Shown piece after piece: positions 17,123 to 21,543 of a stretch of DNA of 64,000 bases. Below the pieces are notes generated by a model that had not been told where the DNA came from, did no database searches, and worked only from the letters and a program-made list of their open reading frames with translations. Source of the stretch: Auanema rhodensis (taxonomy: Eukaryota; Animalia; Nematoda); assembly GCA_964057225.1 (NCBI GenBank), contig OZ059896.1, positions 6,572,001-6,636,000 of the forward strand, written 5' to 3'. Numbering within the stretch: position 1 is the first letter of the stretch; the number at the start of each line of letters is the position of its first letter. Both the position numbers and the translations under genes were made by a program.

Positions 17123-17426
17123 ATGGAGGTGATGGATGATGAATTTACTGTAGAGGCTATTCTTAGTGTTAAACGAGTAGGAACACAAGTTGTATATTTA
17201 GTTCGATGGGCAACTTTTGGACCTAGCGAAGATACATGGGAGCCAGAATGGATCTTTCGCTGTAAGGCAAACTATATTTTACAGAATTAATAAATTTTAT
17301 TTAGACGACTTAGAGCTTTCAAATATGCTAGATAACTACATTGAAAAACATAAGGAGCGAATAAAAAAGTTGAAAGATAGGGCTCGGCTGGAACGACTCA
17401 AATCGAAGACTGTACAACATTTGTGA
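17123..17426 (+). CDS. Small chromodomain protein (about 86 aa; both ends uncertain)
   Basis: EFTVEAILSVKRVGTQVVYLVRWATFGPSEDTWEPE is a canonical chromodomain. One GT-AG intron, followed by a basic helix. Confidence 0.8.
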
Positions 17427-17780
17427 AATTAAAATCATGCTCAATTTGTTTTATCTACGGTTTAATGTTTTATTACTCACTTCATATGCAGCTGATTTAA
17501 ACTTCTATTATATAATTAAACGTCGTATTTCAATTAATTCCTTTGTTTACAAAAGTATATCTTGTATTATATTAGTTCCTTCACGTACAGTATCCTTAAA
17601 AAGGTTGTATATGAACGCTGGTTGTTTTCATCCTTTTATAATGCCACTGATTGTTTTTCATACTGATTATTTATAAATCTAGAATCTGATTCACTATGTG
17701 TGCTATCGTGTTTTACAAGCAAAGCAAAGTAGTTTAAACGATACGAATGAATAGGAAAAATGTGATTCAAAAAAAAATCA

Positions 17781-17823
17781 GTCGCGCGTTTTTACTGAAA
17801 TGGCTAGAAGCGCGCTCCAATGG
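17781..17823. promoter_or_regulatory. CpG-rich promoter motifs upstream of Rpp14-KDSR
   Basis: GTCGCGCGTT and GCGCGCTCCAAT in an AT-rich context about 130 bp upstream of the Rpp14 ATG. They resemble the CGCGCTCCA motif common in Caenorhabditis promoters. Confidence 0.4.
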
Positions 17824-17953
17824 ATATGAAAATTGTTTAAATTAAAGCTTAATTTATCAAAATGTGTTTTTAAACTGTGTTACTTCCTCGACCACTTTTC
17901 GAAAACTTAATAAATATATTGTAGAGCTTATATTGAATCACAAAGTTCTATTT

Positions 17954-18436
17954 ATGGGAAAGAGAACGCCTTCCATTGCTTCTGAGTACGCACGTTTGAC
18001 CGTTAAAGTGTAGGTCACTATTTTGTTATCTAGAAATAATTTCTTATCGTTATTGATTTTTGTTCAATAAATTCTCACCGCAATATTTATAGCGAAACAG
18101 AAGATTTTAATTTCGGATATTCTAAATTCGAACTTCTCGTTTCTCAAGCTATAAAAGAAATTTTAGGGTCTTGTGGCCCCGACTTCAAGGTAAGCACAGC
18201 ACGGCATTTCCCTTATACAATACATTTCTAGGTTGACTTCTACGACGCAACAAGTAAAAAGGGAAGTGTAATCGCTACCGGAGAAGATATTCTTCGTATT
18301 TGGGCTGCTTTATCTTGTTACGGTTCTTTGTACGAACGCCGAGTTGCAGTTCATTTTCACGCGGTAAACTTATGATTTTTTTCATTGCTTCTAACTCTTC
18401 CTAATTTAGTTAACAGAATATCAAGCATCTCAGTAA
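17954..18436 (+). CDS. Rpp14/Pop5-family RNase P/MRP protein subunit (103 aa), absent from the ORF track
   Basis: Exons 17954-18009, 18093-18189, 18232-18363 and 18410-18436 give MGKRTPSIASEYARLTVKVETEDFNFGYSKFELLVSQAIKEILGSCGPDFKVDFYDATSKKGSVIATGEDILRIWAALSCYGSLYERRVAVHFHALTEYQASQ*. AIKEILGSCG and RIWAALSCYGS match the RPP14 pattern (A-x-K-x-L-F-G-x-x-G; KLWSSLTLLGS). Confidence 0.85.
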
Positions 18437-18437
18437 A

Positions 18438-19768
18438 ATGTCAGCTCTTGTGTATTTATGGCTAATTCCTATTTTTCTTTTCGCCCTTTTTCTGGTCTTT
18501 GTTCTTTTGTTGTATTTTTCCACTCCTTCACGTAAAAATATCGAGTTTAAAGGGAAACATGCTCTTGTTACAGGTTTAATTGAATTTTTATTTTTTAATA
18601 TTGTTTTTGCTGTCATAGGAGGTTCTAAGGGTATCGGTAAACAGATTGCTCATCAGCTTCTACTGAGAGGCTGCCATGTTACAATTGTTGCTCGTAATGA
18701 AAATGATTTAAAGGTTAGATACATTTTACTAAAGAGAGTTAAAAAAATTTAGATTTCTTGTGATGATCTTCAATTAGTTGCTGATCAACGTGGACAGAAC
18801 CAAAAAGTTCAGTGGAGATCTGCCGATCTTACTCAAAATTTCGAGAATGTGAGTATCATAGTATTAGTTTTTTTCACTGAAGCAATTTAGATAGAAAAAA
18901 TGGTTCGAGATGCAGAGAAAGAATTGGGCCCTGTCCATATTCTAATAAACAATGCTGGCCACAGCGTTCAAGCTGGATTTGAAGATATCCCTGTAGATGA
19001 TTTTGAAAAACAAATGAAAGTCAATTATTTGAGTGCTGTATGTTATAGAACTTTAAATGACTTTTATTATCTTATATGACAGGTTTATATGACTAAATCT
19101 GTAGTCAAGGGTATGAAATCCAGGAGAGCTGGTCATATTTCTTTTGTATCTTCTGCAGCTGGCCAGTGTGGTATTTATGGATATACCGCTTATTCGCCTA
19201 CTAAATTTGCTTTAAGGTAAATCAATGCGTGATAATTATGAGCAACATTGAATTTTTTCAGAGGTTTCGCAGATGTGCTTCATATGGAGCTTTTACCGTA
19301 TAAAATCAACGTTGCTTTATTATACCCTCCTAATACTGACACAGAAGGTTTCAAGGTAGTGTAACTATTCATAAATTGATTTATTGGTATTTTATTCAGG
19401 TGGAGTTAGAGACAATGCCGGAAGAAACGAAACTGATGTCTGACTCTGCTGGATTGTTCACTCCAGAAGATGTTGCTGCAGCCCACGTTGTAGACATTTC
19501 TGATGGTCAATATACAACCACCATTGGCACCGATGGTTGGATGCTAGGAGTGCTTACTTCTGGAGCAGCTCCTGAAAAGAGTTTAGGAAGGGCTGTTGTC
19601 CAAGTAAATTATACAATTTCCATTAATAGTAATCATTTATTTAATTAGTGTTTCTTGGCTGGCGTGTTCAGGGCAATCATGCTCTGTTATGTGGGATATT
19701 TTAATGGTATTGTTAAGAAGTGTTATATAAGAAGGAGAAATGCAGAAATGGAGGAGAAACAAGAATAA
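18438..19768 (+). CDS. kdsr-1: 3-ketodihydrosphingosine reductase (KDSR/FVT1, SDR family)
   Basis: N-terminal hydrophobic anchor, TGGSKGIG, LINNAG, YTAYSPTKFALRGFAD (YxxxK), YPPNTDTEGF and a C-terminal hydrophobic segment. Confidence 0.93.
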
Positions 19769-20148
19769 TTGTTGTTGTTATTACTTTAGCTCTAAAATTC
19801 ATATTCAAATCACCTGTCAAAATAATTATCAGAACTCAAACTCTGAATTATTGTTGTTAGCATTCTACTGGTTTTAGTAGTTTGGCTTGATTAAGAAATT
19901 GTTTCTTAGTTATATGAAATAATAAACCAAGTAAGAATATTTAGTTAAGCACATTTTGTATTCTTTTATAGTTGAATGAAGTATTTACAATGTAAAAACT
20001 AAAGAGATGAACTTCTTTCTTATGTTTTGCATTCTGTTCATCTCATGATCTTTTGTGGCCGTATTCATGGATTTGCAACTGTATTATTAAAAAGAAAAAG
20101 CGATGTGAAGAATTTATTTTCGTAGTCAGTTTTCGATATTGATGTTTT

Positions 20149-21543
20149 CTATTCAATTGTTAGTATCGTCCCAGAAAGTAAAGGCTGAATTAATGCTAAG
20201 CGATAATAACGAGCTCGTGGTTGATGGTCTAATGAGGAGAAGCTGTCTTCCTGGTATTTAGATTTCCTGAGAGAAATTGAATTTACAATACATCAATATT
20301 TGATAACCTGGTTAATATTTCTACGAAATGTGAGCGGAAGTCATTATTTATTACCAAATAAACAAAAACATTAACTCCAGAATTCAGGCAGGTAGCCCAG
20401 ACAGCTGGTTTCGATATAGTATCGCTTACCTAAATAATGAATTTGATTTTTTCAAATGAAAACTCACTGAAGTTATTAATAAAGAGCACAAAGATAGACT
20501 GTTGGGAATTGATACCAAAACAGTAGATATACAAGAAACAACTAAGCAACTTTTAATGTTTTGTCGATGTTTTTCTCTAAACAATAAAAGTAGTAGGTAT
20601 GAATTAAAAATAGAAGGCTTTAGACCTATGCTCAGAAGAGGTATAACCTTCCGCTATTGGCTTTCGTAGAGCTAATCCATTTAATACAACACCACTAATA
20701 TATCCAATAACATTATGACTATAGATTATACCAGATAGAAACCTGATAAGTTAAAAAAATGCAAATCGAAAACAATAATTTATAAAAAAAACCTCCCGAA
20801 TGCGGCTTTTCGTCCACAATAATATTTGACTGTTCCAGCAGAACGATGATAATAAGAGGTAGTGTAAGCAATGAGAATATACAAGAATACAAATATTAAT
20901 GTAAAATATACTAGAATTTCTTGTCTAAAAATATTTATTTGTCTTCAAATTTGAAATTCGTTTCATCTACCGTTTCTTTGACGTTATTCGCTTACAAGCA
21001 CATGTATTCAAATATTGATCTAATCCCATTGAAAATTGTACAATTGGAGGCCATACATCACCTATATTATGCTATAACTTTTAGAGTCAATGACTTTGAG
21101 ATACCAATCGTTCGTATTAGAAGCCAAAACTCCAAAGCACAACTCCAACTATTTTCTTGTTGGGCTTGACCAGTTTCAAGAACATTATTGTACAAATAGA
21201 TACTAAATTATAATATATGTATATAATTTATATAATTTATGAAGTTATAGGTAAATTCTTACCGATCTAGACCCATTAAACATATTCCAACACAGTTGAC
21301 AAAGTCAGCAATTGCCAGGCATATAACAAGCTAGAAAAATAGCCTATTAGTATAAGCATCAAAATATTATTATAATTGCTTTAAAACCTTATTTTTCTGA
21401 CGCATTGCTCTATTAGTTAATAGACAATAAAGAAGAGCTATGGCTAGAACTGCACATGTAGCGCCAAGTTTAACGTTAACTTTATGGTAAATAATGATTT
21501 CTTGAAGATGACTACTTACGCTTTTTAGATTTACCTTTTCCAT
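20149..21543 (-). CDS. Nematode serpentine/rhodopsin-like GPCR (Srsx-like)
   Basis: In-frame exons with LAIADFVNC, MGLDR, WSCALEFW, YYCGRKAAFG, VSIPN and LNSGVNVFVYLVINNDFR; seven hydrophobic segments. Confidence 0.75.

What the first reader, a model, noticed from the sequence alone, without database searches (positions are those of the whole stretch)
17954..19768. Rpp14-KDSR locus: a 7-nt acceptor choice would switch between a bicistronic mRNA and an RNase P subunit-sphingolipid reductase fusion
Seen: a three-exon Rpp14/Pop5-family ORF ends in a phase-0 donor (GCG|gtaaac, 18363/4). The next acceptor region is tttAG|ttaacAG|aatatcaAG|catctcAG|taaaATG. The AG ending at 18409 gives Rpp14+LTEYQASQ and TAA at 18434-36, one nt before the KDSR ATG at 18438. 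The AG ending at 18416, 7 nt downstream, gives NIKHLSK in frame with KDSR, i.e. one Rpp14-KDSR fusion protein. The AG at 18425 also fuses; the AG at 18433 stops at once or could be a trans-splice site for KDSR alone. There is no intercistronic space, so free Rpp14 must be made from an RNA carrying KDSR sequence. Established: RPP14 is an RNase P/MRP subunit, KDSR performs step 2 of sphingolipid synthesis at the ER, and vertebrate RPP14 is bicistronic with a different lipid enzyme, HTD2. Inference: splicing sets the ratio of free nuclear Rpp14 to a membrane-tethered fusion, linking tRNA/rRNA processing to sphingolipid synthesis independently of the vertebrate arrangement. I have an unverified recollection of a similar arrangement at C. 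elegans kdsr-1, so novelty must be checked.
Basis: partly seen in the sequence, partly recalled or inferred. Interest (0 to 1): 0.92.

Follow-up and report, generated by a model that had tools for sequence, protein, structure and literature searches.

The report
Nematode Rpp14–KDSR two-gene mRNA
In this worm one spliced messenger RNA carries two complete genes, the RNase P subunit Rpp14 and, one base after its stop codon, the sphingolipid enzyme KDSR; the first gene has no further start codons, so ribosomes can probably slide past it to the second, and the proposed splice switch to a fused protein finds no support.

Summary
RNA contigs of four runs (one study) give one about 1.55-kb transcript. 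It starts with an SL1 leader joined at 17925, and all ten introns are removed. Rpp14 exon 3 (ends 18363) is cis-spliced only to the first acceptor (exon starts 18410). Rpp14 therefore ends ...HFHA-LTEYQASQ-TAA, one base before the KDSR ATG at 18438. No fusion junction was seen.

The +7 AG comes from Thr-Glu codons (ACA GAA). It occurs only in this species and Auanema JU1783. The LTE tail in the bicistronic frame is kept, with synonymous changes, in Caenorhabditis, Pristionchus, Steinernema and Dirofilaria.

The same two-gene mRNA appears in RNA contigs of C. elegans and five other species. C. elegans annotates the pair as Y37E11AM.4 ("Ribonuclease P") and Y37E11AM.3, so the arrangement is not new.

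What is new is an ATG desert:
- There is no ATG in any frame between the two start codons in seven RNA-verified species (0 in 1915 nt; 39.5 expected).
- Position -3 is T at every Rpp14 ATG and a purine at every KDSR ATG (5 of 5).

This points to leaky scanning. Both genes are single-copy here. Verdict: a real, old dicistronic mRNA; the regulated fusion is unsupported. The scan found a similar AUG-poor dicistron (TMEM242–PIG-L) elsewhere in this genome.

The parts
17923..17924 (+). AG acceptor for SL1 trans-splicing; the mature mRNA starts at 17925
   Evidence: In run X1 the contig carries the loose letters CAAGTTTG just before 17923. Together with AG these form the 3' end of nematode SL1...CCCAAGTTTGAG. 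The SL1 sequence is from my own knowledge.
17925..18009 (+). Exon 1: 5'UTR 17925-17953 and the Rpp14 start. The ATG at 17954 sits in a weak context, ctatttATGg, with T at -3.
   Evidence: RNA joint 18009->18093; start-codon context.
18093..18189 (+). Rpp14 exon 2
   Evidence: RNA joints in four runs; translation.
18232..18363 (+). Rpp14 exon 3, ending in the phase-0 donor GCG|gtaaac
   Evidence: RNA joint 18363->18410, GT..AG, in four runs.
18364..18409 (+). 46-nt linking intron between the last Rpp14-only exon and the shared exon. It contains no AATAAA.
18410..18573 (+). Shared exon. It holds the Rpp14 tail LTEYQASQ (18410-18433), TAA 18434-36, a spacer A at 18437, the KDSR ATG at 18438 (context agtaaaATGt, A at -3) and the KDSR N-terminal membrane segment.
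18415..18433 (+). No use of them was seen in RNA contigs.
   Evidence: The +7 AG is not conserved.
18619..19768 (+). KDSR exons 2-8: 18619-18713, 18753-18848, 18891-19037, 19083-19216, 19262-19355, 19400-19603 and 19649-19768. The stop is at 19766-68.
   Evidence: Gene model; all joints present in RNA; Pfam adh_short 4e-47; named KDSR homologues.
19769..19952 (+). 3'UTR with AATAAA at 19921-19926. Contigs end at 19950-19952, and at 19998 in X2.
17957..18437 (+). ATG desert. In the mature mRNA there is no ATG in any frame from the 5' end at 17925 to the KDSR ATG, apart from the Rpp14 ATG itself; 310 exonic nt lie between the two start codons.

Best explanation
The locus makes one SL1-capped, polyadenylated dicistronic mRNA of about 1.55 kb.

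The 5' cistron is the single-copy nematode Rpp14, an RNase P/MRP subunit of 103 aa. Its last eight codons and its stop lie in the first 27 nt of the exon that also starts KDSR. The 3' cistron is the single-copy 3-ketodihydrosphingosine reductase, 341 aa. The join is made by ordinary cis-splicing from the Rpp14 exon 3 donor to what was probably once the trans-splice acceptor of KDSR. This is shown by RNA.

How the second protein is made is inferred, not shown. Some 40S subunits pass the Rpp14 AUG, which has a weak context (T at -3). They then scan about 310 nt that hold no AUG in any frame and start at the KDSR AUG, which has a purine at -3. This is leaky scanning. Termination-reinitiation across the 1-nt gap could add to it.

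If so, the ratio of the two proteins is fixed by start-codon context, not by acceptor choice. The arrangement is old: it is found in Rhabditina, Steinernema (Tylenchina), Spirurina, and probably Plectus.
For: Shown:
- One contig per run, in four runs, spans 17923 to about 19950 with all ten introns removed, joint 18363->18410 and an SL1 remnant at the 5' end.
- The same Rpp14-then-KDSR RNA contigs occur in C. elegans from five separate runs, in three other Caenorhabditis-like species, in one further rhabditid and in a Pristionchus-like species.
- Genomic loci of Auanema JU1783, Steinernema hermaphroditum and Dirofilaria immitis have the same donor, acceptor, LTE tail and a stop 1-2 nt before the KDSR ATG.
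- Rpp14 identity: the nematode profile matches human RPP14 at E=3e-6. An AF2 model of the C. elegans orthologue (pLDDT 84.5) has only Pop5/Rpp14/Pop8 chains as its top matches. The profile's distant hits pass the Pfam thresholds for PF01900 and/or PF20976.
- Both genes occur once in this genome.

Signature of leaky scanning:
- Seven RNA-verified species have 0 internal ATG in 1915 nt, against 39.5 expected from the ATG density of KDSR on the same mRNAs.
- Over seven of the mRNAs, three of them the genomic models, the count is 4 against 25.4 from dinucleotide shuffles and about 12.7 from synonymous-codon shuffles.
- The four exceptions are one in-frame Met and three ATGs in two tiny ORFs that end before the KDSR ATG.
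- Position -3 is T at the Rpp14 ATG and a purine at the KDSR ATG in 5 of 5 species.
- Nematode Rpp14 proteins carry 0.59% internal Met, against 1.6% in distant Rpp14/Pop8.
Against: - No translation data were available. Leaky scanning rests on sequence signatures alone.
- Contigs drop rare variants and short SL tips, so a KDSR-only SL-spliced mRNA or a rare fusion isoform cannot be excluded.
- All window RNA comes from one study, and the runs are only guessed to be RNA, although the removed introns show that they are.
- Once the Met-free protein sequence is given, much of the ATG depletion follows. Synonymous shuffles expect only 0.4-4 ATG per species, and single-species P values are weak.
- Auanema JU1783 and Dirofilaria each have two internal ATGs.
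- Species are related, so the counts are not fully independent.
- The very short stop-start gap in most species is not required by leaky scanning.
Confidence: 0.62

Rival explanations
1. Two mRNAs share one acceptor. The dicistronic RNA serves only Rpp14, with KDSR as a long 3'UTR. KDSR protein comes mainly from a monocistronic mRNA made by trans-splicing SL1 or SL2 to the AG at 18409 or 18433, which discards the Rpp14 exons as an outron.
For: Nematodes normally resolve polycistrons this way (established knowledge). The AG at 18433 lies 4 nt before the KDSR ATG. Contigs cannot show that such a form is absent. Strongyloides stercoralis KDSR contigs carry no Rpp14 in their 5' 70-123 nt.
Against: No contig or loose end with SL letters lies at 18410 or 18434 in any run. 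None of the 16 KDSR-bearing RNA contigs I read from other species starts with an SL at that place; the ten from species outside Strongyloides all run back into Rpp14. This model leaves the ATG desert and the weak/strong start contexts unexplained. From my own knowledge (Conrad et al. 1993), an upstream donor converts a trans-splice acceptor into a cis-splice acceptor in C. elegans.
Confidence: 0.2
2. Termination-reinitiation. Ribosomes that finish Rpp14 at TAA 18434-36 stay on the mRNA and restart at the ATG one base downstream, which couples KDSR output to Rpp14 translation.
For: The stop-to-start gap is 1-2 nt in 6 of 10 species: TAAaATG here and in Dirofilaria, TAAcATG in Auanema JU1783. 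The mechanism is known in viruses with UAAUG-type overlaps (PMC3035654, abstract listed).
Against: The gap is 11, 15 and 41 nt in Pristionchus-like L016, C. elegans and L001. By established knowledge, reinitiation after an ORF of about 100 codons is usually poor without a dedicated RNA element, and none was looked for or seen here. The model does not explain the ATG desert or the weak Rpp14 start context.
Confidence: 0.1
3. Regulated choice among tandem acceptors (18409, 18416 or 18425) sets the ratio of free Rpp14 to a membrane-tethered Rpp14-KDSR fusion.
For: The +7 and +16 acceptors would give uninterrupted fusion frames. The +7 site ttaacAG resembles the nematode TTTTCAG consensus about as well as aatttAG does (read by eye). 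Auanema JU1783 keeps a +7 AG. From my own knowledge, closely spaced alternative 3' splice sites are common in C. elegans.
Against: Only the 18363->18410 joint appears in four runs. The +7 AG is missing in eight other species, and fusion-capable AGs are absent in C. elegans, L002, L004 and L016. The frame relation of the two ORFs is not conserved. The bicistronic-frame tail LTE is under protein-level selection. The public 'fusion proteins' are gene-model artefacts that use different, unsupported joints.
Confidence: 0.05

Closest known systems
C. elegans Y37E11AM.4 ('Ribonuclease P', 109 aa, NP_001334199.1) and Y37E11AM.3 (3-dehydrosphinganine reductase, 347 aa)
   Same: This is the orthologous locus. 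It has three Rpp14 exons, then a splice into the first KDSR exon, which encodes the tail LTETPVTNIV*. One RNA contig carries both ORFs in five runs. There is no ATG between the two start codons.
   Different: The gap is 15 nt, so the two ORFs are in the same frame. The linking intron is 530 nt. The 5' end carries SL2, not SL1. It is annotated as two genes. No paper in the searched library mentions Y37E11AM.4 or discusses the dicistronic mRNA.
Vertebrate RPP14 / HsHTD2 bicistronic mRNA (Autio et al. 2008, as cited in PMC4705651)
   Same: Rpp14 is the 5' cistron of a functional two-gene mRNA whose 3' cistron is a lipid-synthesis enzyme.
   Different: The partner enzyme is unrelated: a mitochondrial fatty-acid-synthesis dehydratase in vertebrates, the ER short-chain dehydrogenase KDSR here. 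According to that review the translation mechanism has not been investigated in vertebrates. I did not test whether vertebrate RPP14 is AUG-poor; the vertebrate-like representative P0179 has one internal Met. The two arrangements most likely arose independently.
Nematode operons resolved by SL2 or SL1 trans-splicing, including 'SL1-type' operons with no intercistronic space (my own knowledge, Blumenthal reviews)
   Same: Two unrelated genes are transcribed together in a nematode with essentially no space between them. The unit itself receives a spliced leader: SL1 here, SL2 in C. elegans.
   Different: The upstream gene has no cleavage/polyadenylation site. The downstream acceptor is used for cis-splicing, so the mature mRNA stays dicistronic.
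Leaky-scanning polycistronic mRNAs with AUG-poor, weak-context first cistrons (plant CDC26-TTM3; green-algal polycistronic loci; my own knowledge, not checked here)
   Same: The sequence signature matches: a weak first start codon, no intervening AUG, and a strong second start codon.
   Different: The genes and the phylum differ. Here the first cistron's C-terminus is supplied by splicing into the second gene's first exon.

Membership tests
Rpp14/Pop5 family (Pfam PF01900; RNase P/MRP subunit) | Sequence match to PF01900 at or above the gathering score | tested here: not met
   The window peptide gives no Pfam hit even at E<=10. Only 3 of 11 nematode homologues match, best E=0.0022.
Rpp14/Pop5 family (Pfam PF01900; RNase P/MRP subunit) | Profile-level homology to bona fide Rpp14 | tested here: met
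   The nematode profile matches human RPP14 (6ahr_H) at E=3.2e-6 over 89 of 99 positions. Eight of the ten most distant profile hits scanned pass the gathering score of PF01900 and/or PF20976 (Pop8).
Rpp14/Pop5 family (Pfam PF01900; RNase P/MRP subunit) | Pop5/Rpp14 alpha-beta fold | tested here: met
AF2 pLDDT is 84.5. Foldseek ranks 1-9 are archaeal Pop5, human Rpp14 (TM 0.70), human Pop5 and yeast Pop8.
Rpp14/Pop5 family (Pfam PF01900; RNase P/MRP subunit) | Physical presence in the RNase P/MRP holoenzyme | not testable with these tools
   This needs purification or interaction data.
KDSR / 3-dehydrosphinganine reductase (SDR family) | Short-chain dehydrogenase domain with a TGxxxGIG cofactor motif and a YxxxK catalytic motif | tested here: met
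   adh_short at 4.1e-47. TGGSKGIG and YSPTK can be read in the translation.
KDSR / 3-dehydrosphinganine reductase (SDR family) | Full-length orthology to characterised KDSR | tested here: met
   41-46% identity over 87-100% of the length to vertebrate KDSR, and 81% to Auanema KDSR. Single copy in this genome.
KDSR / 3-dehydrosphinganine reductase (SDR family) | Enzyme activity on 3-ketodihydrosphingosine | not testable with these tools
   This needs an assay.
True dicistronic mRNA translated by leaky scanning | Both complete ORFs lie on one mature, spliced RNA | tested here: met
   One contig in each of four runs has a splice joint linking the two genes. The same is seen in six other species. 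These are contigs, not single molecules.
True dicistronic mRNA translated by leaky scanning | Weak first start context, strong second, and no AUG between them | tested here: met
   Position -3 is T against purine in 5 of 5 species. There are 0 ATG in 1915 nt against 39.5 expected.
True dicistronic mRNA translated by leaky scanning | The downstream ORF is translated from the dicistronic RNA, and its output depends on the upstream AUG | not testable with these tools
   This needs Ribo-seq or reporter mutagenesis.
Nematode operon resolved by trans-splicing | The upstream gene has its own 3'-end signal, and the downstream gene carries a spliced leader | tested here: not met
   There is no AATAAA and no contig end between the genes. 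The linking stretch is removed as a GT..AG intron. No SL letters lie at 18410 or 18434. Absence of a rare SL form is not proven.
   It was not seen in contigs of four runs, but contigs drop rare variants.
   The +7 AG occurs in only 2 of 10 species. Four species have no fusion-capable AG.

The most novel reading that the evidence does not exclude
Across chromadorean nematodes, an essential RNase P subunit and the only KDSR gene are made obligately from one mRNA, in a ratio hard-wired by leaky scanning. This holds even though these animals have trans-splicing to separate cistrons. Rpp14 has thus been joined to a lipid-synthesis enzyme twice independently, to HTD2 in vertebrates and to KDSR in nematodes, which would hint at a real functional link between RNase P/tRNA processing and lipid metabolism and not mere chance adjacency.
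Probability: 0.2. Interest if true: 0.8.

Novelty: new member of a known kind. Interest (0 to 1): 0.55.

Why it matters
Nematodes are the textbook case of animals that separate polycistronic transcripts by trans-splicing. This locus does the opposite. It cis-splices two unrelated single-copy genes into one mature mRNA and, by its sequence signature, relies on leaky scanning to make the second protein.

The arrangement is old. It is present in the model organism C. elegans as Y37E11AM.4 and Y37E11AM.3, so the mechanism can be tested directly by genome editing and ribosome profiling.

There are practical consequences too:
- Many public nematode gene models wrongly fuse Rpp14 and KDSR.
- RNAi or mutations aimed at one gene will hit the mRNA of the other.

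The parallel with vertebrate RPP14-HTD2 is striking but may be coincidence.

Tried and rejected
- **Pfam on the window peptide:** no hit.
- **Word-indexed homologue search with the 103-aa peptide:** no candidates. This says little, because in many genomes these proteins are hidden inside fused gene models.
- **Structure prediction with the spliced window peptide:** I did not resend it, and used the C. elegans orthologue P0134 instead.
- **Read-through of the exon 3 donor (…HFHAVNL*, TGA 18373-75) as the true Rpp14 end:** rejected, because the intron is removed in all contigs and the LTE tail is conserved.
- **The look-up of encoding contigs for the 246-aa C. elegans isoform:** not on record.
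- **First shuffle script:** timed out and was rewritten.
- **Ditylenchus destructor locus (L014):** no LTE tail. The only acceptor lies 2 nt before the KDSR ATG, and the public model skips the KDSR N-terminus. There is no RNA, so it stays unresolved.
- **Strongyloides stercoralis KDSR contigs:** 70-123 nt of 5' sequence without Rpp14 and with an upstream ATG. The linkage is perhaps lost there, but this is unresolved.
- **Literature:** no paper holds RPP14 + bicistronic + elegans, kdsr-1, or Y37E11AM.4.
- **Tool limits:** Only one sequencing-run run and one read-laying run were allowed, so isoform and SL counts at read level could not be made.
Full report
**1. Observation**

- Three exons (17954-18009, 18093-18189, 18232-18363) give a 95-codon frame that ends in a phase-0 donor, GCG|gtaaac.
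- AGs end at 18409, 18416, 18425 and 18433. TAA is at 18434-36 and an ATG at 18438.
- Eight further exons, up to TAA 19766-68, encode a 341-aa protein.
- That protein has a short-chain dehydrogenase domain (adh_short 4e-47). Its full-length best matches are named 3-dehydrosphinganine reductase/KDSR: 81% identity to Auanema sp. JU1783 and 41-46% to vertebrates.

**2. What the RNA shows**

Four public runs of one study hold 60% of the sampled words of 17900-19900. When laid on 17600-20200, each run gives one contig of 1552-1600 nt.
- The contig starts at 17923 and ends at 19950-19998.
- It lacks all ten GT..AG introns, so it is RNA.
- The joint that matters is 18363->18410, the first acceptor. 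No joint to 18417, 18426 or 18434 is present.
- In run X1 the contig begins with CAAGTTTG followed by the genomic AG at 17923-24. This is the 3' end of nematode SL1 (sequence from my own knowledge). The mRNA is therefore trans-spliced at 17925, 29 nt before the Rpp14 ATG.
- AATAAA lies at 19921-26, about 25 nt before the contig ends.

The mature mRNA is therefore SL1, then Rpp14 (103 aa, ...HFHA-LTEYQASQ), TAA, one A, KDSR (341 aa), the 3'UTR and poly(A). There is no polyadenylation signal and no contig end between the two genes.

Three limits apply. Contigs show only the main form. All window RNA comes from one study. A contig is not a single molecule, although the splice joint lies only 28 nt from the KDSR ATG, so single reads must bridge Rpp14 and the KDSR start.

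**3. Identity of the first cistron**

The window peptide alone gives weak results. Pfam finds nothing, and human RPP14 is the best PDB match at only E=0.02. A word-indexed search found no free-standing homologue. The KDSR search explained why: many nematode gene models are Rpp14-KDSR fusions of 400-450 aa. These include Caenorhabditis bovis, C. auriculariae, C. briggsae, Steinernema, Ditylenchus, Plectus, Dirofilaria and Litomosoides.

Stronger evidence comes from profile and fold.
- A profile of the N-terminal parts of these models matches human RPP14 at E=3.2e-6.
- Run against 1.84 billion representatives, a profile of this family (A2) finds 54 proteins. Of the ten most distant I scanned, eight pass the Pfam thresholds for PF01900 (Rpp14/Pop5) and/or PF20976 (Pop8).
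The model has pLDDT 84.5.
- Foldseek ranks 1-9 for that model are archaeal Pop5, human Rpp14 (TM 0.70), human Pop5 and yeast Pop8.

Both genes occur once in the window's 181-Mb genome.

**4. The arrangement in other nematodes**

RNA contigs from other species carry the end of Rpp14 followed directly by KDSR.

| Source | Rpp14 tail | Gap, stop to ATG |
|---|---|---|
| L001 | LTEYEGVF* | 41 nt |
| L002, L004, L005 (Caenorhabditis-like) | LTETSAASIF* and variants | 2, 2 and 1 nt |
| L016 (Pristionchus-like) | LTEVSSSL* | 11 nt |
| C. elegans L007-L011 (five runs) | LTETPVTNIV* | 15 nt |

In the C. elegans genome record the 109-aa CDS ends 15 nt before the KDSR ATG. It is named Y37E11AM.4, 'Ribonuclease P' (NP_001334199.1), and KDSR is Y37E11AM.3. 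The locus structure is therefore already annotated.

I found no paper that mentions Y37E11AM.4 or a nematode Rpp14-KDSR dicistron. [quoted passage not shown]

Genomic loci show the same donor, acceptor, LTE tail and near-abutting stop and start:
- Auanema JU1783: LTEYDQEF*, TAAcATG.
- Steinernema hermaphroditum: LTEIEN*, gap 2.
- Dirofilaria immitis: LTEVQQR*, TAAaATG.

**5. Test of the splice-switch idea**

The first nine bases after the acceptor differ between the ten species but always code Leu-Thr-Glu. The variants seen are TTAACAGAA, CTAACAGAA, CTCACCGAA, CTAACCGAG, CTAACTGAA, CTAACCGAA, TTGACCGAA, TTGACGGAG and TTAACTGAA. Synonymous change under a constant peptide means that the bicistronic frame is the selected one.

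The +7 AG exists only where Thr-Glu is coded ACA GAA, in the window and in JU1783. AGs able to fuse the frames are absent in C. elegans, L002, L004 and L016, and lie at scattered offsets elsewhere. The gap, and so the frame relation of the two ORFs, is not conserved.

The public fusion proteins use varied joints that the RNA does not support, and some skip the KDSR N-terminus. I conclude that the fusion switch is not a conserved feature and is not seen here. A rare isoform stays possible.

**6. How KDSR is probably translated (inference)**

In the mature mRNA of the window there is no ATG in any frame between the Rpp14 ATG and the KDSR ATG, a span of 310 nt. The 29-nt 5'UTR holds none either.
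- The same holds in C. elegans, L001, L002, L004, L005, L016 and the Steinernema model.
- Across the seven RNA-verified species there are 0 ATG in 1915 nt. The ATG density of KDSR on the same mRNAs predicts 39.5.
- Over seven of the mRNAs, three of them the genomic models, the count is 4. Dinucleotide shuffles predict 25.4, and synonymous-codon shuffles that keep each protein predict about 12.7.
- The four exceptions are one in-frame Met (JU1783) and three ATGs in two tiny ORFs that stop before the KDSR ATG.
- Nematode Rpp14 proteins hold 0.59% internal Met, against 1.6% in distant Rpp14/Pop8.
- Position -3 is T at the Rpp14 ATG and A or G at the KDSR ATG in all five species where both contexts are known.

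This is the classic signature of leaky scanning. Part of the 40S flow skips a weak first AUG and meets no other AUG until the second cistron. Termination-reinitiation across the 1-2-nt gap may contribute, but it explains neither the desert nor the 11-41-nt gaps.

A separate SL-spliced KDSR mRNA cannot be excluded with contigs. It would leave these signatures unexplained. From my own knowledge, an upstream donor turns a trans-splice acceptor into a cis-splice acceptor in C. elegans (Conrad et al. 1993).

A likely history is an ordinary Rpp14-KDSR operon in which Rpp14 lost its 3' end and gained a donor that captured the KDSR trans-splice acceptor.

**7. Comparison and novelty**

- The closest thing known is the orthologous, annotated C. 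elegans gene pair.
- The closest parallel is the vertebrate RPP14/HsHTD2 bicistronic mRNA (PMC4705651). There too Rpp14 is the 5' cistron, but the partner is an unrelated lipid enzyme and the mechanism has not been studied.
- The locus differs from nematode operons because the mature RNA stays dicistronic.
- Another agent of this scan reported an AUG-poor first cistron at a TMEM242-PIG-L pair elsewhere in this genome (s1-387517). I tested neither. Together they suggest a small class of such loci.

I file this as a new member of a known kind, leaky-scanning dicistronic mRNAs. It has moderate interest because it is old, involves two essential single-copy genes, occurs in a phylum that could have separated them, and can be tested in C. 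elegans.

Noticed in passing
window 17807-17821: The 15-mer GAAGCGCGCTCCAAT, about 135 nt upstream of the Rpp14 ATG, is identical in Auanema sp. JU1783 (L003), inside an upstream region that otherwise aligns poorly. It may be a promoter element (CCAAT-like), which would suggest that the dicistron has its own promoter.
   Followed up: partly
window 17123-17690: Same-strand ORFs have a chromodomain-like sequence (…VYLVRWATFGPSEDTWEPEW…), and an RNA contig covers 17600-17686. This looks like an upstream gene whose 3' end lies about 235 nt before the SL1 acceptor. I did not determine whether it forms an operon with the dicistron.
   Followed up: no
L009:24-30; L007 and L008 (C. elegans RNA contigs): In C. 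elegans the dicistronic mRNA carries the 3' end of SL2 (ACTCAAG) 11 nt before the Rpp14 ATG. Two contigs run on upstream into another ORF. There the two-gene mRNA appears to be a downstream unit of a conventional operon.
   Followed up: partly
L006:3983-4003 (C. elegans): In C. elegans the Rpp14 and KDSR ORFs are in the same frame, separated only by TAA and five sense codons. Stop-codon read-through, and not splicing, would give a fusion there. This was not tested.
   Followed up: no
L014:3818-4301 (Ditylenchus destructor): There is no LTE tail. An ATG sits at the end of the Rpp14 exon, and the only acceptor lies 2 nt before the KDSR ATG, so a direct splice would be in frame. The arrangement may differ in Tylenchomorpha. 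No RNA was available.
   Followed up: partly
L017-L022 (Strongyloides stercoralis RNA contigs): KDSR contigs have 70-123 nt of 5' sequence with no Rpp14 coding sequence and with an upstream ATG. The Rpp14-KDSR linkage may have been lost in this lineage.
   Followed up: partly
P0006, P0013, P0023, P0030, P0043, P0044, P0059, P0072, P0074 and others: Many deposited nematode 'KDSR' proteins of 400-450 aa are gene-model fusions of Rpp14 and KDSR made through unsupported joints. This is a systematic annotation error caused by the shared exon.
   Followed up: yes
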